Notes: a model not told the origin generated them from the letters alone. Shown: positions 1 through 64,000, counted from the stretch's first letter. The stretch: 64,000 bases of DNA from Macrostomum lignano (GCA_002269645.1 NIVC01001779.1:150885-214884), one strand, 5' to 3'. Numbers and translations are program-made.

Positions 1-3000
1 AAGCTGTAACAACAAGGAAGGAGAAGACGGTGTTTGGACAAAACAATTACAACCTACAGAAAGAAGGACTGTCGCTGCATTCACACAGTGAAAACTATTT
101 CTGGCCACTGCCGGTGTCCATCTCTACATTGAGAGGCGCACTAATTGTATCAACAACTTCGCACAATTTACTGGAAAATGTACGCGAGGCGACCGGACAA
201 GAACCACAAATGCTCGTCCAAGATTGTTCCAAAGAGGGAGCGCTGCGGTTGCAATCGTGAGGAGCGCAAAAGCAAGAAGTGCGACAAGCGCGAAACTGGG
301 TGACAACAATGTACTACAAAAAATTCAACGCCAAGTTGAAGCAATGCGAACAAATTGTCAGCGTAGTCTCCGTGGTTCAAGCCGTAAGTGACGCGTGCAA
401 TATTTTAATGTGATTTATAAAATTTCAATCGCCTACCTAGAAACTCGTTGCATTGTTGTAAAAATTTTAGAATGCAAAGAGAACCGATACGAAGTGCCAC
501 CAAAGCGTTGCAGCCGCAAGAAGACCAAGTGCGTGAAAGCGTACAGGACGTGATTTACACCTTGAATCCCGTTAACTGCAGCTGCAAAAAGTCCGTGAAG
601 GTCTCTAAAAAGAGACGATGCTGTAAGTTTTGGCAAAGAAATTGAGATACAAGCACTCGTACTTACTTTGGCATGCTTGCTCGTGCACTTAAAGATTTTT
701 AAAACGTATTGTGTTTTGATACTGGGCTAGCAAATTTACCGCCACCTCTGAAAGTTGAACCGGATTAGCACGCAGCTGAGTAGACTGAGCCCAAACCCTC
801 AAAGTAGCCTTTGTGAGCGATTGGTTCCTGCGTATTTGTTCTATTTCTATTATTTCCTTTCTGTTTCTGATTAAAAATATTTCAGGCTGCAAAAAGTCCA
901 CCAAAGAAAAGAAGTGCGTCAACAACAGGTTCTGGAAGATCAAGGCAATTAACAGCGTCCTTGATGAAGAAGAGAAGTGCGTCGATCGCGTTGACAGGTC
1001 AACCATTCCTGTGCAGTGCCCTTCGCCATACAAGATCAAGGGCGATTGCATTGGAAATCGTAAGAGCGCTGACTGTGGCTACAGGTTGGTGAATCGCATC
1101 TATTTCAAGACGGTAAAGTGCCGCTGCATTAAGCGACAGAAGACGCAAAAGACCCTCTGCAGCAACTATTGCGATCTATGCCGAAAACCACTGAAGGATG
1201 TTCGCAAGTGCAACAAGAAGGACGGCGGAAAGACATACATCACTAAGAGCTTTGAGTACAGGCTTAAGCGAAACAAGAACTCGCCAATTTGCAGAACTGT
1301 TGTCAGCTCGACTTCGATGGAGAAAGTTGGTAAGCTTTAGTCTTTTTTGTAAGCCCTTTAGTAGAAACACTATTAGACTGAAGATCCCGTCTCAAGCTTA
1401 AAGCAACAGTACAGTTTCCAGTCAGCATTAGCTCGATTTAACTTTCAGAGTGCAATCCGTCTAGGGTGGAGAAGAGCACTTATGAGAAGTGCGGCAAAAA
1501 GACCGGATGCAAGTTCAACATTTTCTACTACAAGATGGTTCCGCGAGGCTGCAAATGCGTTCGTCAGCTGCAGCCAAAAAAGACGAGGCGCAATCTGAAG
1601 TGCAGCTGCAACTGCGAAAAGGCCCGTCACAAAGTGGAGTGCCGTCGAAACAAGTACCTCACATACATCTCCAGGACATATATTCTTAAAAATTTCCGCT
1701 GCAAAGAGAAGGTGGTTAAGAAGTACAAAACAGTAAGCTGCGATTCGCGACCTGACGGTTGGGTGTTCAAAAACAAGTGCGTCCGTCACTTGATGCGCTA
1801 CACACCCAGAATTCGCAACTGCAAGTGCTCGTACTCTTCGCGGCGCATTAAGACCTGCAGATTTGTCGACGAGAGCTGTTGTCCGAAGCCACACCGAAAG
1901 GCAGTTTGTGTAAAGAATGATATCAGGATTTTTTACCTTTATCACTACATCCCTGGCTGCAAGTCCTGCAAGAAGGTGAAAACTGTACAGAAAACCAAGG
2001 TGAAGTGCAGCGCACCCAAAGTAAAGCTAGTTAAGGTGTTATCTACACCGGATGGATCCGTGTGGCGGCTTTTCAAGAAAACCATCTACCGAGTCTCCAA
2101 TTGCGTCTGTAAGCCAAACGATTCGTTCATCCGAATCCCGTACAAATGTCAACCACCAAAAACAATTCAGAAGAATACATGCAAGAAGACAAAGAAATCC
2201 TGTCATCCGACTAAAAACGTCTACGGAGTAATGATGAAGGTCTTCTACGGTGTCAAAACATCGTCTGGCTATCCCGACAAAAGTATGAAGTGCGAAGAGA
2301 TAAATAGAATCGAAATTCGCTATCCATGCTTGTGCATCTGCAAGAAGAAAAACAAGCTTTGTTATAAAAACAAGTACTGGAGACTCACGACAGTGAAGTA
2401 TATCAAGAACTCGCGCAAGTGCGTCAGAAGAGAATCATCTAAGGTCGTTCCGGCTGAGCCGAAGTGCAGAAGGCGAGAAAGAGAATATCGTATGGAGAAG
2501 GAATGCCCAAAATCGGGCTTCTACACTATCATGCAGTCTTTCTACGTGTGGAATAACTGCGAATGCACGAAGCGAGTGATAAAGGTGGGCACTGAAATCT
2601 GCCGCTGCCCAGAGGGCGATAGCAAGCGCGTTTGCAATAAGGCTGGCGACGCTTACGTCGAGTACACAACACACTATCGCTTGTGCGGAGACAAGCTGGC
2701 CTGCTGCAAGCGAATCACGAAGAAAGAAATTCCTGTTAAATGTAAGGCCGGAATTTCCAGAAGCATTAACTGCGACCAAAAGAATCACATTGAAACGGTC
2801 ACTTTCACACGCTACGATGTTAGACGCTGCAACTGCGTTAAGCGCACGTGGACTAAGCTTCAGCCGTGCGTAACCTGCTTGCCACCGCGATGTCGCGTCG
2901 GAAAGAAGGTGAAGTGCATTAAAGGAAGAGTTTGGAAAGTTCAAAAATGGTCTTGCCATCTGTACCGCAAACCAGGTGATTGGCGCACGAAGTGCATCCA

Positions 3001-6000
3001 GAATCACAAGGTATTTAAGCGGACAGTTAGATGCAAGGAAGGAGTTGTTTCAAAGAAAACTAAATGCGACCCACTGACAGGAGAGCAGCTTCATCTTAAG
3101 GAAATCACACGAATTATCAAGTGTAAATGCAAAACAAAGACAGTCACTAAAAGATGCGATTGCACACCTTGCAAGAAGACTCACACCTTCAAGAGGTGTT
3201 TGAAGCTGCCAATGCGTTGGCAGAAGACGACCGTATCCTACAGTCATAATGGCTGCAGATGCATTAAGCACGTCAAACGAGAGGACATTCCAATCCCGTG
3301 CAGTGGCAAAAAGTTTATTAAGAAGAGTGGAAAATGCATAAAGAAAAAATCTGACGGTGGCATTGTCGGGTTTAGAAAGGTTACCGCATGCCGGAAGCAT
3401 CTACTGAATTGCGAGTGCACAGAGGTATGCAAGAAGGAATCAAAACTCTGCTATTGCAAAGGTGTTCTCAAAACGAAAAAATGCGTTAACGACAATACAT
3501 ACGTAACAACTACGATGCGTTGGGCGATGGACAGGGCGGCCAACAGCTGCGTCTGGAGAGAGGAGAGCGTTAGGCGAAAGGTTGTCAAGCCATGTCCTAA
3601 GGAAAAAGTTGAGAGAAGCGGCTGTGTGTACAAGTCAAAAACTGGTGGAGAGAACTATCGCATTGTTAAGACCACTGGCTACAAGCATCATGAGTGCAAG
3701 TGCGTAAATAAACCAACCAAAGTGATTCGCGAAACATGCAACTGCGATCATCGTTGGATTGTCATCAAACGCAAGAACTACGGACCAAGAGGTAACTGCA
3801 AACGCGAGTACACTCTGCGCCGATATGTCAACAAAATCAAGGACGGCAAGGTCGAATGTGTGGAGGATATTCGGATTGTCACCGACAAGCACTGCTGTTC
3901 AAAAACTAAAAAATCCAGGTCCTGTGACAAGCAACAGTGTGTCTATGTGAATATAATTACGAGCTATGTCCTCACAGGTGCCTACAGAAAACGATTCTGC
4001 CAGAAAGCCGAAGATCGGACTATTGACGAGCCGCCGTGCGTCAGAAACAAAAACATCAAGCGCGTCAAGACTGACCGTTCATCGTGTCGAAAGAGCAACT
4101 CCATGCGAATTTCGTACCAGAGACAGATTTGCCGCAACTGCAAGTGCATCTACGAAGAGTACCGCTACGAAACACGGGTTTGCAGGTGCAACTATGAGCG
4201 CAAGAAGTGCAAGTGCGTGCAAAAGGGCAAGAAGCAGAAGTGTCAGCACATTTATGAGCGAATGTCGGCAGACAGGAAAAAGTGCATCCGTGTCAGGAAT
4301 TCTTATCTCGTTCCGGTTTCGTGTGGAAAGCGGCCTAAAGCAGAGCGCATTTGCAACATTAGGCGAAAGGACAAGAAAGGCTACGTGGACAAGTATTACA
4401 CGATTAAAAAATACTTTAGAAAATGGATTTTCAACAAAAAACGTGGTACATGCAAATGCATTTGGAAGCCTGTTGTTACTAACAGACTGTGCAAGTGTCA
4501 ACCGTACAATGAGGACAAGCCGTACGATTATCATGAGTACAGGCGTCGATGCGAGAGAGGCACCAATACCTATGTTGTATTTTACAAGAAGCGAGTCCGT
4601 CGTGGAAACGAATGCGTGGAACTGATCAAGGAGAAAAGGATTGCTGTTAAATGTCATATTAGATCTTCCTGGAGACAGATTCCTGATCCGCCTTGCCCGG
4701 CAAAGAGGGACTACATCCAGCGCATTTTCGAGAAAGGCTACAAGCAAAACTGCCAGTGCAAAAAGAAGCGACGAGTCAAAGCATGCAAATGCCGATGTCC
4801 CAAGGCGACACTTAAACAGGAGTGCTACAAGGATGCCGTTCTGGCTATTTCGAAATCATATAAGCTTGTAAACTGCCAGTGCGTACCGATCGTGAAGAGA
4901 CGCATGCGAAAGATCAGCTGCCCGAAGAACTCATACCGCGTAGTGAAGGCAAAGTCACCAAAGTGTACTGAAACACGACTGAGAATTACGTTCAAAAAGA
5001 CTGCCTGCACTAAATGCACAAAGAAAGTGGAAAGGAGTGTCGATCACTGGTGCTGTCCAACTTTGCCGCCGAATATGAGAGAGAAGATCGAATGTGACAA
5101 GGACAATGCCATCAAGATTATCCGGCGTTTCACCTACAAACTGATTGGAAAAACGCATCCAAATAGAGAGTGCAAAATGACTGAAACAAAAGAAACTCAG
5201 AACGTATTTTGCGACAATCTTAGTCGCGCAGAAAAGGTTGTTAGCTCCTGCAAGAAAAAAGAAGGCTTCACTGATCGAGTTAGAAGAGTTCGCTACTATT
5301 CTGTTTCATTCAATGGCGAAGGGTGCACCTGCGTGTGGTCGCGGCACTACAGATGGGACGTCTGCGGCTGCAGGCCAGACCGCACTGTGGAATCAGCCTG
5401 CAATCACAAGACTTGCATGCAGGACATTCTGCACTACTCGTATCGCATGGTGAAGAACTATCGCGCTAGAAATGTTTGCAAAGAATCTATTAGGCGTACT
5501 AAGCGCCGCTGCGGATGCTGCAAGAAGGACTACTCTAAAGGTCCGGACTGTGATGGAGTACGCACCTTTTTGACGTACTATTATACATTCAGGTGGAACT
5601 ACAAAACTAGGACATGCATCAAGCATCGCCGGGTCGAAAGGAAAAAGGTTGAATGCGGAGAGAGGAATGTGGTCCTGACATCTAAACCCAATCGAGCCAC
5701 TTGTACGTACACCATTACCCGCATCAGAAACTCCATAAAGAAGTGTGAGTGCAAGAAAAAGATTGTGTCAAAGAAGCCATGCTATTTCTGCTGCAGACCT
5801 AGGAAGGTTAAAAATGTGCGATGCATAAATCACAATATCATTGAGACTACGGTGGCCAAAGTTGTTCCAGTTGGATGTAAGTGTCGAAAAGGCAAGACAA
5901 GAAAGACACTAAAAACCGTTAAATGCCGAAAACGGCACGTTGTCAGATGTTACAGTCGCAATTCCCGAACCTGCAAGCAAAAATGCTGTAGATTTGAATG

Positions 6001-9000
6001 CAAAGTACGAAACTGTAAGAAAACGAAGCCACTCATCAGGGTAAAGTGCTGGCATCGGGTGTACAAATGCTGCAATTCTGGGCTTAATAGAATTAAGAAG
6101 TGCGACGAAAAGAAGAGAAGGCACGTGTACACTACCAGCTGGCACGTCTGGCGCCCGTGGAGATGCGACAGGCACACGAAGACCAGAGTGCAGCCTGTGG
6201 TTTGCAACCAGCGCCTGTCTATCGATCGTGGAGCCTGTAACATTAAGGGTCGACGCTCTGGCTATCTTCAGGAGGTGAAGCGCAAGGATATTCACAGACG
6301 AGAGGTGTATGCTGGAGGCTGTCAGTGCAAGGATACAACTAAGGCGAAATACTCTATCTGCGCTTGCAAAGGATACCATGACAAGGAGGTCTGCACAGGA
6401 AACACTCTAATAACCTATCGCCAGTCCTGGGTGATCAAACAGCTTAGAAACGGCAACACCTATTGCTCGCCAATCACCACGGTTATCACCAGCAAGGGTA
6501 CTAAGTGTAAAAGGCCATACTATAGAAAGATTGGCAGCTGCAAGGAAAATGGCATGCAGACTATTCAGTTGGTTACCGAATACGCTGATAAGTGCGCCTG
6601 CAAGAGCACGGAAACTCAATTCGAGATGGTTTGCAGCTGTCCCAAGCCTAAGAAAGACAAGCGCTGCGAATATGAAAGGGGCAGAATGATTACAACTACG
6701 AAAACCTACGTCAAGGTGTGCCCTAGCACGCATTCCTGTCACTGCAAGAGCTCCAAGGAAAAAGTTGTCAATGATATCAAATGCCCAAAGAAGTCGCGAA
6801 CTTGCCACAAAGGCCTGGTTGTTACTATCACACACAAGCGACATGGATGCAAGTGCATTGTAAGTACTGTTTTGCTTAATTGCGTTAGTGTAGTGCGCTT
6901 GTGTGGCTGTAGATTTTGGGCTCTCATGGCCGTATATTTAAGCATATATATACTAGTTTAAGTACATTTGAGCTATTGAGCACAACGTGCCACTGTTGCG
7001 TAACAGTGCAAGAGCATAAACGCGATGCCGAGGCACGCGGGGGAAGGCTAAAGCGAGAGTGAAGGAGAGACTCGACATAACAGTGCACTACAGTTAGTAT
7101 ATAATTTCCCTCCATTTTCCGACTGTTAGTGATGTAGAGATTTAGCTATCCATTTTATCCAGTCAGTACGTACCACAAGCGATCGCATGCTCATTCTAGC
7201 ATACAACTTGTAAAATCCTTGTAGCATCAAACAGTTTTAGATTCGTAAAATAGAGACAATGATCTACACTGCGATTGAAACAAACTGTCAAATGTTTAAA
7301 TTACGATCGTAACGATCATACTTTTTTATTCTTCACTTTTCACTATTTTTTATTCAACCTATCTTAACTCTAGACTCGTCGCACAGAAAAATCCGTGCCA
7401 TCCTGCACCGCCTGCACCGACATCGGCGAAAACTGCTCGGAGCAGAAACGTAGAGGCTATTGCGAGACCAACAAGGAGACGAAGGAAACCTGCAAGGAGA
7501 CTTGCGGCTTCTGCGACGTTAAGCCGTGCCCGAAACCGAAAATCGTGCAGTTTAAACCTCAGCGTGGAATCAGCATTAAGTCGGATCGTAGATTCAAGCG
7601 TTATTTCTACATCAAAACACTTGAGAATAGGAGAGAGTCGGCTTGCATCAGAGCTTGCAAAGAGTCTCCAATTTGTAGATCATTCGATTACGACCTGCGT
7701 TCAAAGAGCTGCGTTTTGAACAGAGTTCGAATGGACGACATCGAGACCAGAGGCTACACATGGGATGTCAGCCAGCAGAAATCTCAATACAGCGTCCACT
7801 ACAACAGGGTGTGCCAGGACGAGTGCGAGTGCAAAGTGAAGCCTATGAACAAAGGCAAATGCGTTTGCCGCGGTACCGGTGTTGAGCGCTGGTGTGCCAG
7901 AAGATTTGCCATCCTGCAGTACCACGAGACCAACGATGGAAGATGCGTGCTCGGTGAAGACTCTAGATACGTTGTCGCTGATTGCGACGAAAGTTGCGTC
8001 GATGTTGGTAAAGACTGCGCCAAGAACAAGCACCTGTGCGGTCGCGACATTGTATTTAGCCGTCGATGCGATCGCACCTGCCGCAAGGTTTGTCGCTGCG
8101 GTGAGGATAGAAAGCAGCACTTTAAGGGTCTTTGCACGCAACGTGCTAACGGAAAATGGACCTACTACCAGAGACTTGTCAAGTACCAACGGACGGATTG
8201 CAGTTTGTGCGAAATGGTTGTTGAGGAGTCCTACGAAGAGTGCACACCGGGTAAGTTCACTATTTTCAACTTATATTTAAAATATAATCGGATACTAATC
8301 AATAAAATGCTTTTAAAATAAACTTCAGAGCCTTGTGACAAGACTCCGATCAAGGTTGTTGGTGACTGTATCAAGGGCGTGAAGCTTATTTCGATCTATT
8401 CAAGAAGGCGTCACAGGGATGGTAGCTGCCCTGTCACTCTGGTCAAAGTCATCAAGGAGGATTGCATTAAGTGCTGCAAGGAAATCATGAAGGATGTTGG
8501 TCGCTGTCAGAGGTACAAGAGCAGAGGTGGCTACTACAGACCAGTCACTCACTCTTGGTACGTCAAGCGAAAAGGAAACTGTGAACTGAAAATGGAAGTC
8601 CGCTGGTTCCGCTGCAGCAAGATTGGTAAGTTCCAATACTCAGTAAAGTGTTAGCTTGTAGATTGAAATTTTCCTTTAAAAATGAACGCTTTGTCCCTGT
8701 TTTAAACCGAGTTAATACTGATGAGAAAGCTAAAGTAATTCGAATCTCCTGGTCAATTTGTAGCCTGTCCTCGTGACTTCACCACTAACGGCAAGTGCGA
8801 ATTCGGCCGCCGACTGACCTACAACGTCTTCTACACTGTTGATAGCGAGCGAAACTGCGTCAGACATGCAAAGGCCTACAAGACCTACTGCAAACAGAAG
8901 TCTCGACCCGAGTGCAATGATGCCTACATCGATCTGCTCTCTCCACGCCAGTGTCTGCAGATTAAGAAGAAGGGCATGTGCGTTAGAAATGAGGGTGCCA

Positions 9001-12000
9001 GTCTCTGCGCCAGAACATGCAACTTCTGCGTTATCAAGAAGTTCTGCACAAAGAAGATGGGCCCAGTTGACTTGGTCCTCACTGTCGATGCCTCCGACTC
9101 AACCGAGTTAGTTACATTTGAGAACTACGTTGTACCATTCTTAAGGTCGATTGTCGGAAAGATGGGTCGAACTGTTAAAGTGTCCGTCATTCAGTACGGT
9201 TCATCACCAAAGACAGTGTTCAGGCTTGGTGACGAGGTGTATCCACGCAACATGATGACGAGGATCAATCACATGGACTTAAGCGGTGGTTCCTCATACA
9301 CTGCTCGGGCCTTGTATGCTGCCTCAGAAGAGTTCAGGCTGAGAGGCAGACGTGCAGCCCATAAGGTATCCATCCTAGTTACTGACGGCAGAAACAGTGG
9401 CAAAATGTTGATTAAGCCGGCAGTGAAGAGACTAAAACGCTATGCTGATACTTCCATCGTTGTTGGCATAGGACGCCACGTGAGCGAGAACGAAATGCGT
9501 CTAATTGCATCCGATTACGCCTCAGACGAAATCAGGATATCGAACTTTAGACAGCTAGCTGGAATTGTTGACAAGGTAGTGAGAAAAATCTGTCCTAAGG
9601 GAGGCAAGCCAGTCAGACCCAAGCCCGGACCAAAACCCGGACCCAAGCCTGGCCCACGACCAGGACCAAAACCAGGACCGACGCCAGTACCAGGACCCAA
9701 ACCGGGACCGAAACCAGGACCAAAGCCGGGACCAAAGCCAGGACCAAAGCCGGGACCAAAGCCGGGACCATCAAATGGCATTGATCTTTACTTCGTTGTT
9801 GACTCAAGCAGTTCTGTAACTTCAGATGAGTTCAACTTGATCAAGCAATACATTAAGTCATATGTCAACTCTATCGTAGTCTCGCCAGAAGACACTAGAG
9901 TCAGTATTATTCAATACTGGGATCAAGTAACAACGACAGTCGACATCGAAGAATACAGAACCGTGAATGATCTTATCCCTGCGATTGAGAACTTGAAGTA
10001 TTTCAACGGTCAAAGATCCGTTCTTGGCGATGCGCTAATCCTCACATCCAAAATGATTGCAAGGAATGAGCGAAACGTACCAAAGGTTGTTATTGTTATC
10101 GCTGGAACACCGCCAACAAACGGGGAAGCAATCAAAGACGCTGCGCCGAAGCTTATCTACTACGCTGATAAGGTTATTGCTATTGGCGTCAAGAACCACA
10201 TGCCCAAGACTGAATTGCTGCTGATTTCTACTACCGTGGAGGACACTATCATTATTGAAGAGTACTCGAAACTGCACGACACCATCCCTGTTATTATCGA
10301 GAAGACCAAGATCAGCGAGCGAAAGAAGCGACCTGCTCCTGGTGGAACTGGTCAAGACATCGTGTTCATTGTGGATAGCAGTGACTCAATTGGCCAGACC
10401 AATTGGAATGTGTACATCAAGGGCCTGCTTAAAGTAATCACTGAGTACGTTGTTGTCTCACCATCAGACACTAGGTTCGCACTTATCCAGTTCTCGAAGC
10501 CAGCACAGGTTGTATTCGGCTTCAAAGACTACACTGACGGAGAAAGTCTTCGAAGGGCTATCAATAAGCTGAAGCCATACCATAGAAGCACCTACCCGTC
10601 AATCGGAAACGCACTGAAAGTTGCGGTTGACTATGTCAAGACAAAGAAGCGTTCCGGTGTGCCAACTTCAGCCATTATTATCACTGCTAGCACTTCCTCG
10701 CCCAGAGTTGGGAAGCCGATTGAAGAGGTCATCACAGAAGTCCAAGAGGTGTTCGACTACATTATTCCGGTGGCCATCCGTAACCGAGTGGACTTGCCCG
10801 ACCTAGAGAAGCTTGCCAAGCCGGATTCGTCGATGATTATCACCACAGAGGAGCTGGATGAATTGATTCCGCTATCTAAGCGAATCATTTCTCTTACGAC
10901 AGTTCGGCTAAGGCAGAGGCCACTTGTTTGCAGAAAACGAAGTCGCGGTGACTTCATCTTTGTCATTGGAGCCGGCTCTGAAACTGTTAAGCATCGATAC
11001 TTTGAAGAAATCAAGAGCTTTATTAAAGGTTTCTCATCTGAATACGAGATCGATGAGGGTGCATCCAGAGGTGGAGTCTTCATTCTGGGATCAAGCTCTC
11101 AGAAGGAAATTGGATTGAACATGTTTAGAAGCGACATAGACTTTAGGGCAAGCATCAATAGACTATCTGCTCCGAGCTCCAGCACAGTGCACTTCCGATC
11201 TGGAATGGAAAAAGTTGTGCGCTATGCCAGACGAAGCCGAACAAAAAAGAGACCAGCTACATTGATTTACATTTCGGATGGCAGTGAAGTAACAAAGAAT
11301 GTTTACTCTGTGGCTCCTAAGCTCGCGTCTTCAATCCGAAAGACAATTGTTGTTGGTCTTAAACCAACAATAAAGAGAAGAGCGCTTCTAAGAACAATGG
11401 TCACGGATGTTCGTAATGATTTTGTTAATGTACGTAGAATCCGGGATCTTAGACGAGTCGCGAAAACAATCTCTGGAATGACTTGCACTAGAACTAAGAA
11501 AGCAGCTAAAGTTAAGAAAACAGAGCCAGGTGTTAAGCGCATCGTTATGAAAGAAAGTAAGCGCTCAGTCACCAAAAACGGCTCTAAAAGGCAAAAGACA
11601 AAGACCACCAAACGAAAAACTGTCGCAAAGAAGCAGACAAAGAGACAGCGAAAGACGACAGTAAAAATCGAGGGCCAGGGAGGCAAAAATCGAAAGCGTA
11701 TTTCCAAGAAGATTATTAAAAAGAATCGAAGAAAGATGAAAAAGAAGATGTCAGTTATCTACGGAACAACAATAATTAGGGGTTCGCCACGCAGATACAT
11801 CAAGAAAATTAAATTCGGCAAACGATGGTTTAAGACTCGGGTGATTCGCGTCCTCAAAGGACATGGAAAGAGACGTCGAGCTAGACGATATCTGCAGATC
11901 AGATACAGGAAAAAATGGATTCGATTCAATGTCAAGCGAAAAAGAGTCCAGTTCAGACGCCGATGGTACAAAATCCGAGTTACACGTCGAAGATTTTTTA

Positions 12001-13938
12001 TTAGAATGAGAAGAAGATGGCGTGCGCTCCAAACAGCAAGAGGAAAGGCATTTGTGACTATCAAGGGTCGAAAGCGCATCCTGACTAACAGGAAGCGACG
12101 CAACCGAAGACAAAGGAAGCATCGACGTCATATCAAAATTAGATACACCACTAAGATCATAAAGCACAAAAAGATACGAGTTCCGTCGAACGTAAAACTC
12201 GGTTTCAAAAAGGTTCCAGTGAAAGTCGTTTCAAGAAACGGCGCAAAAAAAGGGAAAACGTATAAAACATTGATTCGCATCGGTCGTCGTTGGGTGAGAT
12301 TCAGTACTAGACAAAGGCGAGTAAGAATCGGAAAAGGATGGTTCCGAGTGACCTACAGAAGAAAAGGACCAGGTGTTGTGCATCGAAGAAGATGGTATAA
12401 GATCAGGGTGACAAAGAAAGGTTTCAAGATTCGCGTGGCAAGAAAATGGCGAGGTCTAGTTACTACTCGGCGAAAGCTCTATATTCAATATAGAGGAAAA
12501 ATCTCCCGAGTTGGAAAGCCGCTTGTCGTTCGCTCGCTGAATGGAAAATTTAAGAAGAGAAACAAGAAAAAGCGAGTTAGCAAGAACCCAAAGCGGCGAC
12601 ATGGTCGATCTAGAAAAAGCAAAAGGCGCCACCGGAAAACAAATAAGAATATAAGTAGCAAAAAGCCAAAACGCCAGAGAAAAATCACAAAAATCAGTCG
12701 CCGAAGCTTCACCAAGGTGAGCGGACGACCTCCGATCCGAATCCGTTTCACCATGAGAAAGATTAATGGCAAGAAGGTTCGCGTACCCAAAACAGTCAGA
12801 CTTGGCAGGAAGGTCGTTCCAGTGAAGATCCAACCACGAACCATCGTTAGACGAGGAAAGCGCATCGTCAAAAAAAGAGTCCTTGTTCGCATTCAAAAGC
12901 GCTGGCACCCGTTCAGCGTTCGTCGCAAAAAGATCAAGGTTGGAAAGACGTGGGTTACCGCATACTACAGGAAAAAAGGCTTCGGACTCAGATACAAGCG
13001 TAGATGGGTCAGAACACGCATCACAAGGAGAAAAATCAGAGTTCGTGTCACCGGAAAGTGGAGACAAGTCATCGCAAAGAGACGCAAAATTTACATCCGC
13101 GGGCGCAAAAACAAGCGATACTACACTGGACTAAAAATTCCCAAGCATCTAAGAAGACGAAGCCGAAAGATCCGCTTCCGCATGAGACGATCACGAAAGA
13201 TCCGCTTCCGCAAAGGAAAAGGCGTCGAGACGATCACGAAAGATCCGCTTCCGCAAAGGAAAAGGCGTCGTAAGACGATCACGAAAGATCCGCTTCCGCA
13301 AAGGAAAAGGCGTCGTAAGACGATCACGAAAGATCCGCTTCCGCAAAGGAAAAGGCGTCGTAAGACGATCACGAAAGATCCGCTTCCGCAAAGGAAAAGG
13401 CGTCGTGAGACGATCACGAAAGATCCGCTTCCGCAAAGGAAAAGGCGTCGTGAGACGATCACGAAAGATCCGCTTCCGCAAAGGAAAAGGCGTCGTGAGA
13501 CGATCACGAAAGATCCGCTTCCGCAAAGGAAAAGGCGTCGTGAGACGATCACGAAAGATCCGCTTCCGCAAAGGAAAAGGCGTCGTGAAAAAGCTTGCTG
13601 GCAGACACTCGAAACACAAGGCCCGAGCTGCCTTCGTGAAGAGAAAATGGTATCACACGAAAGGAGGAGTTGTCGTTGAGAACGGTCGCAAAATTGTCCT
13701 GAATCGGCGCGGAAAGATGCGCCGTAGCAGCAGTAGTCGCAAAATCATGACAAGTTCCCATAGCAGCCACTCGCACAGAATTAAATTTCACAAGTCAGGA
13801 AACGCCTCCGCTGGCTCGTCCTCCAGCAGCAGCATGACACACGAAAGCCACTCGGTTGTAATGGGCAAGCCAAAAGTGCACGACTCTGGTTGGATAACCA
13901 CTCATAAAAGCTCGTCTACCTCCTCGAGCAAGACGTAA
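1..13938 (+). CDS. Giant multidomain, highly basic, Cys-rich, probably extracellular protein (5'-partial, about 4,240+ aa); putative adhesive/cement/structural protein
   Basis: Exons joined by GT-AG introns with compatible phases: <1-383, 471-622, 886-1329, 1449-6859, 7374-8250, 8329-8625, 8764-13938. Phases checked from 622 onward; the first two exons contain indels. Domain order: Cys/K/R modules, ShKT, PAN, ShKT-like, Cys modules, ShKT, vWA1, (PGPK)n, vWA2-4, K/R/W-rich region, 45-bp repeats, H/S-rich tail, TAA at 13936-13938. A frameshift at 13227/13228 must be corrected. No start codon or signal peptide lies in the window, so secretion is inferred from the domains. Confidence 0.9.
1449..6859 (+). 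CDS. 5.4-kb single exon encoding tandem degenerate Cys-rich basic modules of about 45-60 aa
   Basis: Acceptor tttcAG ends at 1448 and donor GTAAGT starts at 6860. Uninterrupted frame (ORF track 1466-6961) with a recurrent C-x(5-9)-C...Y/F...CxC...C.C pattern. Confidence 0.9.
7413..7514 (+). other. ShKT domain 1
   Basis: CTDIGENCSEQKRRGYCETNKETKETCKETCGFC has 6 Cys with the terminal CxxxCxxC typical of ShKT. Confidence 0.85.
7527..7815 (+). other. PAN/apple domain
   Basis: ...ESACIRACKESPICRSFDYDLRSKSCVLN...YSVHYNRVC matches the PAN pattern CxxxC...CxSFxY.....C.L. Confidence 0.85.
7995..8093 (+). other. ShKT-like domain 2
   Basis: CVDVGKDCAKNKHLCGRDIVFSRRCDRTCRKVC; 6 Cys with slightly altered terminal spacing. 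Confidence 0.7.
8913..9029 (+). other. ShKT domain 3
   Basis: CNDAYIDLLSPRQCLQIKKKGMCVRNEGASLCARTCNFC, read in frame from the exon starting at 8764. Confidence 0.8.
9063..11480 (+). other. Four von Willebrand factor A domains (about 9063-9594, 9777-10300, 10350-10900, 10948-11480)
   Basis: Beta-A strands with MIDAS-type motifs DLVLTVDASDS, DLYFVVDSSSS, DIVFIVDSSDS and degenerate DFIFVIGAGSE, plus the usual V.VIQY / ILVTDG / VGIG elements. Confidence 0.9.
9618..9770 (+). repeat. Coding (PGPK)n proline-rich hinge, about 12 tetrapeptide units
   Basis: Degenerate 12-bp units with synonymous Pro codon variation (ccc/cca/ccg/cct), lying between vWA1 and vWA2. Confidence 0.9.
13185..13587 (+). repeat. 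Coding 45-bp tandem repeat (RRSRKIRFRKGKGVV): 8 full units plus one 43-bp unit
   Basis: Units begin at 13185 (43 bp), 13228, 13273, 13318, 13363, 13408, 13453, 13498 and 13543. Units end in synonymous GTA or GTG. Confidence 0.95.
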
Positions 13939-13998: not shown

Positions 13999-14004
13999 AA
14001 TAAA
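13999..14004 (+). terminator. Candidate polyadenylation signal AATAAA of the giant gene
   Basis: AATAAA 60 nt after the TAA at 13938, followed by T-rich sequence. Confidence 0.55.
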
Positions 14005-20200: not shown

Positions 20201-26425
<6,225 letters not shown>

Positions 26426-27344
26426 TTTAATTTTCGCGGACGTTAATTCGAAATAAAGAAGTATATACGAGGGTATCACAAAACAGTTTGAATTCGGAAC
26501 GAACACTCAACACAGAGAGAAAGAGAACAAGTTGTTTAGAGTTCTCCTTATAAAGATCGTTCTTTTTTCAAATTTCCTTTCAGTTAGTTAACGTGCTGGG
26601 TGACGATGAATTTCGAAGTTCGAAGGGCAGTTGACTGAAAGAAACGAGTGTGTGTGCGAATGCAAAATAAAATATATTAAGCCCGGGATAAAATGATTTT
26701 TCGCTTTGAATTTGTATAATTAAGTGTAAATAACATGATTTGAAAACTATCTGCTTTGAAACAAATGTTCAAATTTCTCTATTTTATAATGATATTATTC
26801 TTTCTTATTAATAATTAACCAGTCTTATTAAACGTCCTAGCTTTTTTATTTTGTTAAAACATGTTCAGTTAGCACGATAACTCAAATGTTCGTAGGTAAT
26901 TGTTCCCATCAATTTTTTTCACTAAGTCAAGTTTCGTTGCTATAATCATAAACTTACGCTCTTTTATTTATGGAATACAAAATACGTTGCTATTTTTATG
27001 TATTAATTTAACTGCAAATACTTCCATGACGTCAGTTAATGGCAGACCAACGTCATATCATATATAAAAATGTGTAATTCCATATCCAACAAATATTGCA
27101 TAGCATACGAATGAATTCGAATAAATTCGCATGATCAGATAAATTTACAAAACTAATAACCTTTTTATACAATTCATTTAAAATTATAACCATAAATAAT
27201 CTTTAATGACATTCCAGTTTTCTGTTATTGCACAATTTATTGTACTGTCGGTACGAGCTGGAGCGTACCAATGTACATGTTAACGCTGTATGTACGTGTT
27301 TGACACAAGGACTACTCATGTTGTTCTTGGTTTGACATGTACTA

Positions 27345-28536: not shown

Positions 28537-29897
28537 GTGCTGGCGCCCCTGGTGCTGGCGCCCCTGATGCTGGCGCTCCTGGTGCTGGCGCTCCTGGTGC
28601 TGGCGCACCTGGTGCTGGCGCCCCTGGTGCTGGCGCCCCTGGTGCTGGCGCCCCTGGTGCTGGCGCCCCTGGTGCTGGCGCCCCTGGTGCTGGCGCCCCT
28701 GGTGCTGGCGCCCCTGGTGCTGGCGCCCCTGGTGCTGGCGCCCCTGGTGCTGGCGCCCCTGGTGCTGGCGCCCCTGGTGCTGGCGCCCCTGGTGCTGGCG
28801 CCCCTGGTGCTGGCGCCCCTGGTGCTGGCGCCCCTGGTGCTGGCGCCCCTGGTGCTGGCGCCCCTGGTGCTGGCGCCCCTGGTGCTGGCGCCCCTGGTGC
28901 TGGCGCCCCTGGTGCTGGCGCCCCTGGTGCTGGCGCCCCTGGTGCTGGCGCCCCTGGTGCTGGCGCCCCTGGTGCTGGCGCCCCTGGTGCTGGCGCCCCT
29001 GGTGCTGGCGCCCCTGGTGCTGGCGCCCCTGGTGCTGGCGCCCCTGGTGCTGGCGCCCCTGGTGCTGGCGCCCCTGGTGCTGGCGCCCCTGGTGCTGGCG
29101 CCCCTGGTGCTGGCGCCCCTGGTGCTGGCGCCCCTGGTGCTGGCGCCCCTGGTGCTGGCGCCCCTGGTGCTGGCGCCCCTGGTGCTGGCGCCCCTGGTGC
29201 TGGCGCCCCTGGTGCTGGCGCCCCTGGTGCTGGCGCCCCTGGTGCTGGCGCCCCTGGTGCTGGCGCCCCTGGTGCTGGCGCCCCTGGTGCTGGCGCCCCT
29301 GGTGCTGGCGCCCCTGGTGCTGGCGCCCCTGGTGCTGGCGCCCCTGGTGCTGGCGCCCCTGGTGCTGGCGCCCCTGGTGCTGGCGCCCCTGGTGCTGGCG
29401 CCCCTGGTGCTGGCGCCCCTGGTGCTGGCGCCCCTGGTGCTGGCGCCCCTGGTGCTGGCGCCCCTGGTGCTGGCGCCCCTGGTGCTGGCGCCCCTGGTGC
29501 TGGCGCCCCTGGTGCTGGCGCCCCTGGTGCTGGCGCCCCTGGTGCTGGCGCCCCTGGTGCTGGCGCTCCTGGTGCTGGCGCACCTGGTGCTGGCGCACCT
29601 GGTGCTGGCGCCCCTGGTGCTGGCGCCCCTGGTGCTGGCGCCCCTGGTGCTAAAGCCCCTGGTGCTGGCGCCCCTGGTGCTGGCGCCCCTGGTGCTAAAG
29701 CCCCTGGTGCTAAAGCCCTTGGTGCTAAAGCCCCTGGTGCTTACATGTAATCCTGGTGCTTACATGTAATCCTGGTGCTTACATTTAATCCTGGTGCTTA
29801 CATGTAATCCTGGTGCTTACATGTAATCCTGGTGCTTACATGTAATTCTGGTGCTTACATGTAATCCTGGTGCTTACATGTAATCCTGGTGCTTACC
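28537..29897. repeat. GC-rich 15-bp minisatellite (cctggtgctggcgcc, about 80 units) grading into a 19-bp repeat (cctggtgcttacatgtaat, about 8 units)
   Basis: Directly visible; both units share the cctggtgct core. Confidence 0.97.
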
Positions 29898-34034: not shown

Positions 34035-36668
34035 CTAGGCTTGGTGATCTCGACTGCCCGTCAGACGATGAAACATTTGTTCGTTAATTTCCTGACTTCG
34101 GTCGGGCTTTCTCAGGCTGAGGAACACGTAGCCGCCGACCATTTCGGCCAGCGTTTTGCACACGGACAGCCGGGAGGCAAAGAATGGGCTGGGGACCAAA
34201 GTCATCTCGTGCGGCGGCCGGTTGAGGGTCAGACGGAAGCTCATTACCTCCCAGTTGACGGTCCAGGAGGCGAGTTCCTGGGTTGGAGTTGGAAACAAAT
34301 TTAATGTGTTTGCTGATGATGATTAGGGCAACAAATATTTACAATAGAACTTGTTCCCGGTTACAGGTAACATAGTTAAAAGACGACAGATAGTTTCACG
34401 TAGCTAAAGCACCGGTTCCCGGCTTTTCTCACCTGGTATCGCCAGGTATTGAGGATATCCCCGGTCTGCACGTCCAGCCGCATAATCCTGTTAAACGCTA
34501 CGCCAAACAGGGCGTCGTGATTTTTGCGTCGCTCTTTACGAAACTCGCTAAACGTCATCGGCTTGGAGCGACTCTCCGTGTAATTAACAAGGAAATACGC
34601 CACCCCGTGCATTGGCAATCGTTGCCAGGTGCGAATGTACTCCAGCTTCGACTCGAGTAAATTTAGACTCCGTACGTTTGCGTGGCGCTCCAAAATGCCC
34701 TGAGTACGAGGATTGAGCAAGCGAAATTTGTATTTATGCACAAAGTACTTAATAATCAGATTATCAGACTACAACTCTACAACTTCTACAACTTCAGCAA
34801 AACAAAATATCCGAAGTATTTACCTGCAACAGAGCCCGACTCTTGTGCTTCTTTAGGCAGCGCAAGGCAACGAAATCGGCCACATCAATGTTGGGCATGC
34901 TGTCAACAGTCAGCATTGGCTGCGGCCTTGGCGCCTGCATGTCCAGTCTTGTCAGGGTCTCCTTCAGTTCGCTGTCATAGAGACTCTTGCTAGCCAAAGT
35001 TTTGCCCCGAGACGCCAGGGAGATTGCAGCAACCCACTGGGCGTACTGGTCTTTGGTCTCGCAGCGGAGCCACACCTCTTGCATTAGTCCGGACTGGGTC
35101 AGGATGAACAAGCGGATGCCAAACTTTCTGGTAGTCATGTTCAAATCCGGCACAACTTCGGCATTTTTTAAATTGAACGACTCAACAAAGGCGGCCATTT
35201 GACTAGCTGCGGCCTGGTCCGGGTACAGGTAGAGCGTCGTATCTCGCAGGGCAAAGAAGTACCGTTTGTAGTTCTTCAGAGTGAAACGTTTGGGTTTGAA
35301 AAATTTCAGGTAGCCAGAAAGTTCGGGCACCTCGCGCACCTCTGGCTGCTTCTGTTGAAGATGCTGTTGCTCCGACTGCTGACGTGACAAGTTCCCGATG
35401 CCATAGTGCGCGTCCGACATCAGCGACATCTCTAGATCGGCCAGTGCAGCGTCGATTTCGTCATCGGCAGCCGTGTCCTCCTCTGTGACTGTAGCCGCCG
35501 CAGCGGCAGCGGAAGCCGCAGCGCCGGAATGTGACGATGTTGCTCGTTGAGGATCGTTTGCCTGTAGATGGGCCTGCAACTGCAGAGCAGCGAGCAGCAT
35601 CATTTCCTCATCGGTGCAGTCGATCTCCTCAGTGAGAAGGGACCATTTGACCTGCTCGTAGATCTGGTTGATGCGAATAGCGTCATATTTGATGTTCAAA
35701 TCGTAGAATGCAAAGTATTTGAATCGCAGCAGCAGTTCCTCTTCGCAGCCAGGTCGGACGCCCTGCTCCATTAGCGACTTGGACGAGTCCAGCCACGTGA
35801 CTGACAGCATTGCTCGTTCGGTGTTGCTTCTCAACCGCTGAAGACCCTTCTCAGTCAGGGCCGTCTGCAACGGCACGTGTGGACTATTGGCCAAGTAGCT
35901 CTCGTCGGCACCCTCGAAAGCCAGCGAGTTGATGGACATCGGCGACATGAGGTTGGCGGACTCTCCTAGCCGAGGACTGCCAGGCGACTTTACCAGGCTG
36001 TCCGCTCCGTTTCCGTAGGGCAAAGTGCCCGCCGTCATTGAAGGCGCCTTCGGAACCAGCGGATTAAAGGCGTCGCTTCGTCTATTGTTCGATAGGCGCT
36101 TTCGCGAGTCCATAGTGTCATTGCCGCCGTTTCTATTGATCGATCGCGATCGGCGCATGCTGCTGAACCGGCTGGACTTGGTTGTCCCGACGCTGTACGC
36201 GTAGCCGTCACCGCCGCCGCCGCCGCCGCCCAGACCGAAATCTGCCGTGTCAATTCGGCGCTTCAGTGAGAGCTCTTCCGGGTGCCGGATGCCCAGATCC
36301 TTGCAGATGCTCATCACTACGCTGAATACAGTCTGGGAAAAATTGACTCTAAGCTCCTTCTCCTGGAGATCGGGAAGCTGGAGGCGCAGCCAGTTGTGCA
36401 TCCGATGGAATTCCAGCTTGGCGTCGGCTTGCACACCATTCTGGTCGAGAGTCTGTCGAGTTTTCAGCAGCCAACAGTTCCTCTCGGGCCACCAGAGCCC
36501 ATGGTCCGACCAATCAAGCTTAACATCGATTGCTTCGACGAGTTTCAGCATGACGCCGCCGATATGCGTCTCGCCGGAGACGCGGATGCGCTTGACAATT
36601 TGCAGGTCTTCGACTAGTATGCTGAGCTCCCAGCTGCCGTCAACGTAAATTCCATGGCCGAGGTCCAT
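34035..36668 (-). CDS. FERMT2: Kindlin (fermitin family / UNC-112), 784 aa
   Basis: Exons 36668-34824, 34699-34433 and 34277-34035, all phase 0 GT-AG. Motifs: DGSWELSILV (F0), DWSDHGLWWP, RHPEELSL, WLDSSKSLMEQGV, LRFKYFAFYDL, RINQIYEQVKWSLLTEEIDCTDEEMMLLAALQ, a PH domain (LSGYLKFFKPKRFTLKNYKRY), F3 WTVNWEV, and a C-terminal GGYVFLSLR...FHRLTG. The symbol gives the family, not strict orthology. Confidence 0.95.

Positions 36669-46748: not shown

Positions 46749-47405
<657 letters not shown>

Positions 47406-48319: not shown

Positions 48320-49680
<1,361 letters not shown>

Positions 49681-51128: not shown

Positions 51129-51950
<822 letters not shown>

Positions 51951-62639: not shown

Positions 62640-64000
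<1,361 letters not shown>

What the first reader, a model, noticed from the sequence alone, without database searches (positions are those of the whole stretch)
11480..13184. Three cryptic copies of a ~130-aa Arg/Lys/Trp beta-hairpin-like module inside the low-complexity region
Seen: the basic region is not random. Compare IKIRYTTKIIKHKKIRVPSNVKLGFKKVPVKVV...LIRIGRRWVRFSTRQRRVRIGKGWFRVTYRRKGPGVVHRRRWYKIRVTKKGFKIRVARKWRGL with IRIRFTMRKINGKKVRVPKTVRLGRKVVPVKIQ...LVRIQKRWHPFSVRRKKIKVGKTWVTAYYRKKGFGLRYKRRWVRTRITRRKIRVRVTGKWRQV, and a more diverged first copy (LQIRYRKKWIRFNVKRKRVQFRRRWYKIRVTRRRFFIRMRRRWRAL). Trp recurs about every 12 residues after K/R, with alternating hydrophobic/basic residues and almost no acids. 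Inference: amphipathic cationic beta-hairpins suited to cation-pi cohesion, binding polyanions or membranes, or antimicrobial action.
Basis: partly seen in the sequence, partly recalled or inferred. Interest (0 to 1): 0.7.

Follow-up and report, generated by a model that had tools for sequence, protein, structure and literature searches.

The report
Polycationic Trp-hairpin modules, flatworm secreted protein
The basic tail of a giant, unannotated secreted protein of the flatworm Macrostomum lignano holds three old, diverged copies of a 120-140-residue Arg/Lys/Trp module that is predicted to be all beta-hairpins, has no detectable relatives, and most likely acts as a polyanion-binding or cohesive element like the Lys/Arg-rich regions of flatworm glue proteins.

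Summary
Window 11748-13157 encodes three copies of one module: A (aa 925-1043), B (aa 1053-1191) and C (aa 1254-1394) of ORF 8976-13679. Alignment scores are 6 to 22 SD above three kinds of composition-matched control. The copies are old: synonymous sites are saturated and DNA identity is 40-48%, yet 28-40% of residues are kept.

One detail is wrong. Trp recurs every 16/18/18 residues, not about 12, and strict hydrophobic/basic alternation is only weak. Each module carries +50 to +58 net charge and no Asp or Glu.

AlphaFold2 predicts an all-beta hairpin meander (module C pLDDT 71, module B 56). No Pfam, PDB-sequence or fold match was found, and no hit among 1.84 billion representative proteins.

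The window is Macrostomum lignano DNA. The modules end a more than 4,000-residue protein that also has Cys/Lys-rich repeats, ShK, PAN and four VWA domains.

Best reading, not tested: a polyanion-binding cohesive tail of a secreted matrix or adhesive protein. It resembles, without detectable homology, the Lys/Arg-rich regions of the glue protein Mlig-ap1. The tissue and the ligand are unknown.

The parts
8976..13679 (+). Long ORF (1567 codons) that holds the finding. In order: end of a ShK-like domain, four VWA domains with a PGPKPG linker, the Lys/Arg-rich region with the three modules, and a 15-residue tandem repeat. The exon really begins upstream, near 8751, in the same frame.
9063..11465 (+). 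Block of four VWA domains (approximate bounds). Three keep a DxSxS MIDAS motif at aa 38, 276 and 467. A PGPKPG linker at aa 214-266 follows the first domain.
   Evidence: Pfam PF00092 E 2.5e-89, 4 stretches; DxSxS positions; 12-bp tandem repeat at 9616-9770
11478..11747 (+). Spacer L0 (aa 835-924). Lys/Thr-rich, no aromatic residues, net charge +37. Not part of a module.
11748..12104 (+). Module A (aa 925-1043), the most diverged copy. It lacks one 18-residue Trp hairpin. Net charge +50, no Asp or Glu.
11898..12053 (+). Trp-hairpin block of module A (aa 975-1026; Trp at aa 981, 997, 1015). One further Trp unit is centred on aa 951.
12105..12131 (+). Spacer L1 (aa 1044-1052), made of Arg, His, Lys and Gln only.
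12132..12548 (+). Module B (aa 1053-1191), a full copy. Net charge +50, no Asp or Glu.
12273..12482 (+). Trp-hairpin block of module B: four tandem 16-18-residue units (Trp at aa 1106, 1122, 1140, 1158).
12549..12734 (+). Spacer L2 (aa 1192-1253). Rich in Lys, Arg, Ser and Asn, no Trp or Tyr, net charge +31.
12735..13157 (+). Module C (aa 1254-1394), a full copy. Net charge +58, no Asp or Glu. This is the better-predicted AlphaFold2 model.
12885..13094 (+). Trp-hairpin block of module C: four tandem units (Trp at aa 1310, 1326, 1344, 1362).
13140..13588 (+). 45-bp tandem repeat, about 10 units at 98% match. The first two units read RRSRKIRFR... in the ORF's frame. After a junction that is 2 bp shorter than the others, near 13226, the later units read TITKDPLPQRKRRR in that frame and RRSRKIRFRKGKGVV in the +1 frame.
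13225..13938 (+). Alternative (+1) frame, open through the repeat and on to a Lys/Arg/Trp-like and Ser/His-rich tail. This is the likely ancestral C-terminus if the 2-bp difference is an assembly error or an allele.
   Evidence: AATAAA at 13999
1..8650 (+). Probable upstream exons of the same gene: Cys/Lys-rich repeats (frame-1 ORF at the window start; about 888-1340; 1466-6961), ShK + PAN (7395-8251), and further Cys-rich sequence (8328-8650). Introns are short, GT...AG. The gene runs off the 5' end of the window.

Best explanation
The three modules form the polycationic C-terminal tail of a giant secreted, disulfide-rich, multi-domain protein of Macrostomum lignano. The protein reads: Cys/Lys-rich repeats, ShK, PAN, ShK, four VWA domains, then the Lys/Arg-rich tail.

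Each module is a Cys-free beta-hairpin meander. It starts with two long hairpins that have conserved Pro/Gly turns. Three or four tandem 16-18-residue Trp hairpins follow, with consensus [IV]-R-h-x-B-B-W-h-B-h-x-[VT]-[TR]-R-B-B (h hydrophobic, B basic). A module carries about +50 charge and no acidic residue. Aromatic-free Lys/Arg/Ser/Thr/Asn spacers separate the modules.

Most likely mechanism:
- The modules bind polyanions multivalently. Candidates are sulfated or carboxylated glycans of mucus or glycocalyx, a secreted anionic partner, or negatively charged substrata.
- Counter-ion binding relieves the charge repulsion that would otherwise oppose folding.
- Trp, Tyr and Phe next to Arg and Lys add cation-pi and hydrophobic cohesion.
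- The VWA domains supply metal-dependent protein-protein links.
- Together this makes a cohesive or matrix component of a flatworm secretion: adhesive, cement, or mucus/rhabdite.

Shown here: the region is coding, repeated, old and constrained at the protein level, extremely cationic, predicted all-beta, set among extracellular-type domains, and from this species.

Inferred: the ligand, the cohesive role, folding on binding, and the tissue.
For: Species:
- The neighbouring kindlin ORF is 100% identical to M. lignano BOX15_Mlig007286g3.
- The window aligns at 96-98% to the longest stretches of NCBI contig NIVC01003898.1, and at about 92-94% to shorter ones.

Coding and extracellular context:
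- A 4.7-kb open frame carries four VWA domains (E 2.5e-89). ShK and PAN lie in upstream exons.
- Three VWA domains keep the DxSxS motif.

Repeat significance: z 6-22 against three kinds of control.

Age and constraint:
- pS is 0.77-0.88 (saturated) and pN 0.43-0.55. DNA identity is 40-48% and amino-acid identity 28-40%.
- 95 of 138 B-C alignment columns keep their residue class. Four of the 18 columns invariant in all three copies are Trp or Gly (W54, W88, W106, G24); Arg accounts for nine.

Ordered substructure:
- Trp spacing of 16/18/18 is kept in every copy. Twelve Trp-anchored units share a consensus (z 11).
- Modules are about 35% hydrophobic or aromatic, against 11-16% in the spacers. 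All 12 Trp of the region lie in modules.

Charge: +50, +50 and +58 per module, and +237 over aa 835-1403.

Fold: AlphaFold2 gives all-beta hairpins with the same strand register for B (pLDDT 55.7) and C (pLDDT 71.1, pTM 0.62; first 80 residues at 79-87).

Precedent in the same species (PMC6410801): the Lys/Arg-rich regions of the cohesive glue protein Mlig-ap1 are needed for adhesion. Heparin and Fondaparinux block attachment, and cationic peptides block release.

Precedent elsewhere: related GRK or GRKHS proteins occur in other flatworms, with a kringle-receptor model for their binding (PMC9229212). Cation-pi cohesion in cationic, aromatic marine adhesives is reviewed in PMC11907405.
Against: - There is no expression, localisation or binding evidence of any kind.
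- No homologue was found, so there is no comparative support.
- The structure models rest on a 3-row alignment of the copies themselves. They have low to moderate confidence, and their coordinates could not be inspected for Trp-Arg contacts.
- The domain set (ShK/PAN/VWA) differs from that of Mlig-ap1 (C-type lectin/vWD/C8/TIL/EGF).
- The modules are not low-complexity G/R/K repeats.
- A net charge of +50 in about 130 residues argues against a stable autonomous fold.
- The repeat just downstream carries a frame change. This copy could therefore be a decaying paralogue or a mis-assembly.
Confidence: 0.45

Rival explanations
1. The region is an intrinsically disordered polycationic spacer with no defined fold. 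The three copies are only the remains of segmental duplication, and the region works purely through its charge density.
For: - Extreme charge: +237 over 569 residues.
- Module B was predicted with low confidence, pLDDT 55.7.
- Hydrophobic/basic alternation is weak.
- The known flatworm Lys/Arg-rich regions are low-complexity (PMC6410801, PMC9229212).
Against: - Synonymous sites are saturated, yet Trp, Gly and hydrophobic positions and the 16/18/18 Trp spacing are kept in all copies.
- Modules are about 35% hydrophobic or aromatic, against 11-16% in the true spacers.
- Module C reaches pLDDT 71 and pTM 0.62.
Confidence: 0.2
2. The region is antimicrobial. The modules, or peptides cut from them at dibasic sites, act as Arg/Trp-rich membrane-active beta-hairpin peptides that protect a secretion or the eggs.
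For: - Composition and the hairpin prediction recall Arg/Trp-rich and beta-hairpin antimicrobial peptides. That resemblance comes from my own knowledge and was not tested here.
- Dibasic sites are abundant.
Against: - The modules contain no Cys, so there are no disulfide-stapled hairpins.
- Dibasic sites are everywhere, so no discrete processing pattern stands out.
- The region is the tail of a matrix-type protein of more than 4,000 residues with VWA domains.
- No similarity to any known family.
Confidence: 0.12
3. This copy is non-functional: a decaying paralogue, or an assembly artefact in a repeat-rich polyploid genome. On this view the modules are real sequence but not a working part.
For: - A 2-bp frame change sits in the adjacent 45-bp repeat.
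- No protein from this gene appeared in the protein search.
- The window differs by 2-8% from the NCBI contig over the aligned, mostly non-coding, stretches.
Against: - A 1567-codon frame is intact, with four good VWA domains.
- The repeat stays open in both frames.
- The missing annotation is explained if the NCBI contig starts inside the gene, as an offset estimate suggests.
Confidence: 0.1
4. The region binds nucleic acid, either as a sperm or chromatin basic protein or as an extracellular DNA binder.
For: Arg/Lys content is protamine-like or histone-like.
Against: - The region shares a reading frame and gene with ShK, PAN and VWA domains and Cys-rich repeats, all of which are typical of secreted proteins.
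- No match to nuclear basic protein families in Pfam.
Confidence: 0.05

Closest known systems
Lys/Arg-rich regions A-C of Mlig-ap1, the cohesive glue protein of M. lignano, and the separate GRK/GRKHS proteins Mile-ap3 and Tmed-ap3 (PMC6410801, PMC9229212)
   Same: - Same species or phylum.
- A very large secreted protein with an extremely cationic, almost acid-free, Lys/Arg-rich terminal region.
- That region is attached to protein- and carbohydrate-interaction domains.
- The spacers here (for example ...SKNPKRRHGRSRKSKRRHRK...) have the flavour of the Mlig-ap1 antibody peptide SRKPRRKNRKSRKP.
   Different: - The Mlig-ap1 and ap3 regions are low-complexity G/R/K(H/S) repeats. The modules here are about 35% hydrophobic or aromatic, carry conserved Trp at 16/18/18 spacing, and are predicted as beta hairpins.
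- The core domains differ: ShK/PAN/VWA here, against C-type lectin/vWD/C8/TIL/EGF.
- No sequence homology was detected.
- Expression in adhesive glands is not known.
VWA-repeat extracellular matrix proteins (collagen VI-like)
   Same: Four tandem VWA domains. The best database hits are collagen alpha(VI)-like chains at 21-26% identity.
   Different: - No collagen triple-helix region. The PGPKPG linker has a 4-residue period, and Pfam Collagen did not match.
- None of those relatives has the cationic Trp modules.
Thrombospondin type-1 repeat (stacked Trp-Arg ladder, heparin binding). Recalled from my own knowledge.
   Same: In concept: beta strands in which Trp and Arg side chains could stack by cation-pi contacts, together with glycosaminoglycan binding.
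   Different: - The thrombospondin repeat is about 55 residues with a WxxWxxW motif and six Cys.
- Here the Trp spacing is 16-18 residues and there is no Cys.
- No Pfam match.
Beta-hairpin repeat ligand binders: choline-binding and cell-wall-binding repeats, and glucan-binding repeats
   Same: Tandem units of about 20 residues, each a hairpin with a conserved aromatic residue. These proteins were the top Foldseek hits, though not significant (Cpl-1 1oba, dextransucrase 3tto).
   Different: The matches are not significant (E 0.45-0.5, TM 0.13-0.21). There is no Pfam match, the charge is far higher here, and these families are bacterial or phage.
Cationic beta-hairpin and Arg/Trp-rich antimicrobial peptides (tachyplesin, arenicin, protegrin and lactoferricin types). 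Recalled from my own knowledge.
   Same: Arg/Lys together with Trp/Tyr/Val/Ile on short hairpins.
   Different: Those are free peptides of 17-25 residues, mostly stapled by disulfides and cut from small precursors. Here there are Cys-free modules of about 130 residues inside a giant matrix-type protein.

Membership tests
Flatworm cohesive Lys/Arg-rich (GRK) regions, Mlig-ap1 / ap3 type | Expressed in adhesive gland cells and present in footprints | not testable with these tools
   No expression or proteomic data could be linked to this locus.
Flatworm cohesive Lys/Arg-rich (GRK) regions, Mlig-ap1 / ap3 type | Low-complexity repeats made mostly of Gly, Arg and Lys (plus His and Ser) | tested here: not met
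   Modules are 36-42% Lys+Arg, only 6-9% Gly, and about 35% hydrophobic or aromatic, with ordered 18-residue units. Only the spacers L0 and L2 are of that low-complexity type.
Flatworm cohesive Lys/Arg-rich (GRK) regions, Mlig-ap1 / ap3 type | Extreme positive charge with almost no acidic residues | tested here: met
   Net charge +237 over aa 835-1403, with 3 Glu and 0 Asp.
Flatworm cohesive Lys/Arg-rich (GRK) regions, Mlig-ap1 / ap3 type | Core of C-type lectin, vWD/C8/TIL and EGF domains (Mlig-ap1, PMC6410801) | tested here: not met
   Pfam finds VWA x4, ShK and PAN, and none of those domains.
Flatworm cohesive Lys/Arg-rich (GRK) regions, Mlig-ap1 / ap3 type | Detectable sequence homology | tested here: inconclusive
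   The profile of the three modules found nothing among 1.84e9 representatives or in the word-indexed search.
VWA-domain extracellular matrix proteins | VWA domain(s) above the Pfam threshold | tested here: met
   PF00092 at 298.5 bits against a cut-off of 23.8, 4 stretches. This applies to the host protein, not to the modules.
Collagen VI | Gly-X-Y triple-helical region | tested here: not met
   No PF01391 match. The linker is PGPK with a 4-residue period.
Thrombospondin type-1 repeat | WxxWxxW motif, six conserved Cys, Pfam TSP_1 | tested here: not met
   Trp spacing is 16-18, the modules have 0 Cys, and Pfam gives no hit at E<=10.
Choline- / cell-wall-binding hairpin repeats | Repeat of about 20 residues matching Pfam CW_binding_1, solenoid fold | tested here: not met
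   No Pfam hit. Foldseek's best match to Cpl-1 has E 0.45 and TM 0.21, which is not significant.
Cationic beta-hairpin antimicrobial peptides | Short, disulfide-stapled hairpin released from a small precursor, with membrane activity | tested here: not met
   The modules have no Cys and lie in a protein of more than 4,000 residues. Antimicrobial activity itself was not tested.

The most novel reading that the evidence does not exclude
The module is a new protein domain: a Cys-free beta meander held together by a Trp/Arg ladder and carrying about +50 net charge. It folds or assembles only when polyanions neutralise it. The flatworm uses it as a switchable electrostatic fastener in a secretion, for example for reversible adhesion or for condensing and releasing an anionic partner. 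The gene was missed because the public contig appears to break inside it.
Probability: 0.15. Interest if true: 0.8.

Novelty: new variant of a known kind. Interest (0 to 1): 0.5.

Why it matters
Temporary adhesion in flatworms is one of the few bioadhesive systems with a tested molecular model. In that model a polycationic cohesive protein is switched off by an anionic releasing factor (PMC6410801, PMC9229212).

This locus adds a second giant polycationic secreted protein in the same model species. No protein from it turned up in the protein search. Its cationic region is not low-complexity. It is built from conserved, Trp-punctuated modules that are predicted to be all-beta.

If the modules fold on polyanions, they would give a defined, expressible unit of about 130 residues. 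With it one could study charge-driven and cation-pi-driven cohesion, binding of glycosaminoglycan-like ligands, and like-charge condensation. They would also be a template for biomimetic glues.

If the protein is instead made in cement, rhabdite or prostate glands, it would extend the polycation principle to other flatworm secretions.

Tried and rejected
- **Protein search with the whole ORF.** It returned only VWA relatives at 26% identity or less, plus a spurious PGPKPG match (P0011). No M. lignano protein appeared.
- **Searches with the module profile.** The word-indexed search, the exhaustive search of 1.84e9 representatives, PDB sequences at E<=10 and Pfam at E<=10 gave nothing. Pfam showed only noise: DUF6263 at 0.05 and ParE_like at 3.5.
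- **Sensitivity of those searches.** Leave-one-out profiles show that a relative as close as B is to C would have been found (E 4e-24 and 6e-15). One as distant as A would not (E 1.4).
- **Foldseek against PDB with both models.** No hit at E<=0.001. Best TM was 0.2.
- **Exact-product look-up of the ORF.** Not on record.
- **Reaching the Lys/Arg-rich region in NCBI contig NIVC01003898.1.** I tried to hop from the kindlin gene through the neighbouring BAR-domain gene. My reconstruction of that gene gave 213 residues plus no terminal exon that makes up the annotated 250, so the hop was dropped.
- **Supplement of PMC6410801.** The Mlig-ap1 sequence and its repeat alignments are images, not text, so no direct comparison was possible.
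- **Literature searches.** Peptide strings of this protein, and Macrostomum combined with VWA, cement gland or rhabdite, gave no link to this gene.
- **Module elsewhere in the window.** A six-frame search found it only in this ORF.
- **DNA-level repeat or transposon.** Rejected, because the copies share only 40-48% DNA identity.
- **Chance ORF in purine-rich DNA.** Rejected, because frame 0 is open for 4.7 kb while the other frames are broken.

Full report
**1. What is at the coordinates**

Window 11480-13184 lies inside a single + strand ORF, 8976-13679, of 1567 codons. The stretch aa 835-1403 is 22% Arg, 20% Lys, 9% Val, 8% Ile and 2.1% Trp. It has 3 Glu and no Asp.

**2. Is the repeat real?**

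Yes. I defined three segments: A (aa 925-1043, nt 11748-12104), B (aa 1053-1191, nt 12132-12548) and C (aa 1254-1394, nt 12735-13157).

| Pair | Smith-Waterman score | 500 full shuffles | z | Score vs reversed partner | z, shuffles within 8-residue blocks |
|---|---|---|---|---|---|
| B-C | 292 | 64 +- 10 | 22 | 71 | 17 |
| A-B | 171 | 60 +- 10 | 11.5 | 64 | 11 |
| A-C | 144 | 69 +- 10 | 7.8 | 71 | 6 |

The reversed and block-shuffle controls are, where slightly different segment ends gave 172 for A-B and 137 for A-C. Those two controls keep local composition, so the signal is not a composition effect.

- A window-30 dot-plot shows diagonals at offsets 143, 201/204 and 347 scoring 73-104. The best score in 20 shuffles of the region was 56.
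- Modules score only 29-55 against the spacers.
- Identity to B is 40% for C and 34% for A. A lacks one 18-residue unit.

**3. Age and constraint**

On the codon alignment, DNA identity is only 40-48%. The proportion of synonymous differences is 0.77-0.88, which is saturated. The proportion of non-synonymous differences is 0.43-0.55.

The copies are therefore old, and they are not a DNA-level repeat or a recent expansion. What survives is a protein-level pattern:
- 95 of 138 B-C columns keep their residue class.
- Of the 18 columns invariant in all three copies, three are Trp (W54, W88, W106) and one is Gly (G24). Arg accounts for nine more.

**4. Fine structure**

All 12 Trp of the region, out of 15 in the whole ORF, lie in the modules. 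The spacing is 16, 18, 18 in B and C. In A it is 16, 18, with one extra Trp 30 residues upstream.

Twelve 18-residue windows anchored on Trp share the consensus [IV]-R-h-x-B-B-W-h-B-h-x-[VT]-[TR]-R-B-B. Units at different positions within a module resemble one another far more than random windows from the modules do (mean pair score 12.6 against -10.2 +- 2.1, z 11, Trp column excluded). The null was not anchored on a residue, so this z is generous.

Each module thus has two parts:
- An N-terminal half without Trp, for example IKIRYTTKIIKHKKIRVPSNVKLGFKKVPVKVV.
- A C-terminal array of three or four tandem Trp units.

Other measures:
- Modules are about 35% hydrophobic or aromatic. The spacers L0 (aa 835-924) and L2 (aa 1192-1253) are 11-16% and have no Trp or Tyr.
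- Strict hydrophobic/basic alternation is weak. The lag-2 autocorrelation is not significant, and only the lag-1 and lag-3 terms are negative in B and C.
- Net charge is +50, +50 and +58 per module, with no acidic residue. It is +237 over aa 835-1403.

**5. Predicted structure**

I ran AlphaFold2 with the three-copy alignment as input.

| Module | Mean pLDDT | pTM | Note |
|---|---|---|---|
| B | 55.7 | 0.36 | |
| C | 71.1 | 0.62 | first 80 residues at 79-87; |

- Both models are purely beta: 14-15 strands joined by 2-residue turns.
- The strand positions coincide once the 3-residue indel between the copies is allowed for.
- In C, Trp 57, 73, 91 and 109 each sit at the second residue of a strand that follows a turn.
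- The two runs share one alignment, so they are not independent. I could not inspect the coordinates.
- Foldseek against PDB found nothing significant for either model (best E 0.41 and 0.45, TM about 0.2). The top, non-significant hits for C were hairpin-repeat proteins: the choline-binding domain of Cpl-1, dextransucrase glucan-binding repeats, and teneurin.

**6. Relatives**

None were found.
- The module profile gave no hit in the word-indexed search of 5.8e9 proteins.
- It gave no hit at E<=1e-3 in the exhaustive HMMER scan of 1.84e9 representatives.
- It gave nothing in PDB sequences at E<=10, and only noise in Pfam at E<=10.
- Leave-one-out profiles show the limit of that scan. A relative as close as B is to C would have scored E 4e-24 or 6e-15, but one as distant as A only E 1.4. 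The negative result therefore excludes relatives of about 40% identity, not remote ones.
- In the window, the module occurs only in this ORF.

**7. Context**

*Species.* The kindlin ORF at 34794-36689 (-) is 100% identical to M. lignano BOX15_Mlig007286g3. That gene lies on NCBI contig NIVC01003898.1 (70,868 bp, GCA_002269645.1). The longest stretches of that contig align to the window at 96-98% identity, and shorter ones at about 92-94%. The window therefore comes from another assembly, haplotype or paralogous copy.

*Why the gene is not annotated.* From the coordinate offset, the NCBI contig would begin near window 9.8 kb, inside the PGPKPG repeat of this gene. This is an inference, but it would explain why no M. 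lignano protein turned up.

*The host protein.* It is much larger than the ORF.
- The ORF's first residues complete a ShK-like domain whose start lies upstream in the same frame, in an exon beginning near 8751.
- Short GT...AG introns connect back to exons 8328-8650 and 7395-8251 (ShK + PAN). Further back lies a 1831-codon Cys/Lys-rich exon at 1466-6961 (9.9% Cys, 26% Lys+Arg, no Pfam match) and an exon at about 888-1340.
- Similar Cys-rich sequence is already open at window position 1. The gene therefore runs off the 5' end of the window and encodes more than 4,000 residues.
- The ORF itself has four VWA domains (PF00092, E 2.5e-89). Three keep the DxSxS motif.
- All these domains are typical of secreted, disulfide-bonded proteins. 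That statement rests on established knowledge of the ShK, PAN and VWA families.

**8. Most likely function**

Wunderer et al. showed that M. lignano adhesion needs Mlig-ap1. Its Lys/Arg-rich regions A-C cover more than 3,600 residues and have a calculated pI above 14. They flank a lectin/vWD/EGF core. Heparin or Fondaparinux prevents attachment, and Lys, Arg or a cationic peptide prevents release (PMC6410801). In other flatworms the cationic part is a separate GRK or GRKHS protein, proposed to bind a kringle receptor (PMC9229212). Cation-pi contacts between Lys or Arg and aromatic residues are an accepted source of cohesion in marine adhesive proteins (PMC11907405).

Against that background, I read the tail here as a polyanion-binding, cohesive tail of a secreted matrix or adhesive protein. 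The modules would supply ordered, multivalent cationic and aromatic surfaces. The VWA domains would supply protein-protein links. Because about +50 charge in 130 residues should oppose autonomous folding, I infer that folding or assembly depends on counter-ions or on a polyanionic partner.

Only the sequence-level properties are shown. The ligand, the tissue and the cohesive role are inferred. Confidence is about 0.45.

**9. Rivals**

- **Disordered polycationic spacer (0.2).** Disfavoured by the conservation pattern and by the model of module C.
- **Antimicrobial hairpins (0.12).** The composition fits, but there is no Cys, no discrete processing pattern, and the host is a matrix-type protein.
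- **Non-functional copy or artefact (0.1).** Raised by the frame change next door, but the 4.7-kb ORF is intact.
- **Nucleic-acid binding (0.05).** Contradicted by the extracellular-type domains.

**10. Membership**

The modules are not members of the following families:
- The Mlig-ap1/ap3 GRK regions. The composition is not low-complexity, the core domains differ, and no homology was detected.
- Thrombospondin type-1 repeats.
- Choline-binding repeats.
- Hairpin antimicrobial peptides.

Each of these fails a defining feature that I tested. The modules may still work like the first of these.

**11. Novelty and score**

The kind is known: a polycationic region in a giant flatworm secreted protein. 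This version is new: an ordered, Trp-punctuated domain of about 130 residues, predicted all-beta and without relatives, in a gene from which no protein turned up in the protein search. I rate it a new variant of a known kind, with interest 0.5. It is well supported as a real and unusual sequence feature, but there is no functional or expression evidence.

Noticed in passing
window 13140-13938: The 45-bp tandem repeat (about 10 units, 98% match) changes reading frame. Units 1-2 read RRSRKIRFR(KGKGV) in the ORF's frame. The junction near 13226 is GTCGAG, where the later junctions are GTCGTAAG or GTCGTGAG, so it is 2 bp shorter. After it the ORF reads TITKDPLPQRKRRR about eight times and stops at 13679. 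The +1 frame reads RRSRKIRFRKGKGVV through the remaining units and runs on to a Lys/Arg/Trp-like and Ser/His-rich tail ending at 13938, with AATAAA at 13999. This could be an assembly indel, an allele or a real new C-terminus; it is not resolved.
   Followed up: partly
window 1-8650 (+): Giant Cys/Lys-rich repeat region upstream in the same gene. It includes a single 1831-codon exon at 1466-6961 (9.9% Cys, 26% Lys+Arg, recurring CxC...CxC motifs) with no Pfam match at E<=0.01. Similar sequence is already open at window position 1, so the gene is cut by the window's 5' end.
   Followed up: partly
window 9616-9770: PGPKPG linker (12-bp tandem repeat, aa 214-266) after the first VWA domain. From the coordinate offset, NCBI contig NIVC01003898.1 appears to start about here. 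That would explain why no M. lignano protein from this gene turned up in the protein search.
   Followed up: partly
window 25527-47013 compared with L001: The window is not identical to the public Mlig_3_7 contig. The longest aligned stretches are 96-98% identical and shorter ones about 92-94%, while the kindlin protein is 100% identical. The window is therefore a different assembly, haplotype or paralogous copy.
   Followed up: partly
window about 22800-26430 (-): Endophilin-like BAR-domain gene with at least five exons. One of its introns holds the 21-bp minisatellite at 23163-24550. My exon reconstruction gave 213 residues and did not reach the annotated 250-residue product.
   Followed up: partly
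window 42724-45003 (-): 759-codon ORF with hydrophobic segments towards its C-terminus. It looks like a membrane protein gene but was not examined.
   Followed up: no
window 21046-22451, 23163-24550, 28537-29741, 38744-40767, 46746-47381, 48334-49680, 51130-51950, 54575-56657, 59159-59694, 61433-62194, 62648-63144: Very high load of micro- and minisatellites with periods of 4, 12, 15, 21, 26 and 32 bp and up to 337 copies. They create many long spurious ORFs on both strands.
   Followed up: no
window 60662-60731 (-): Marginal tRNA match in Rfam: 30.1 bits against a gathering score of 29, E 0.03. It may be a tRNA-derived repeat.
   Followed up: no
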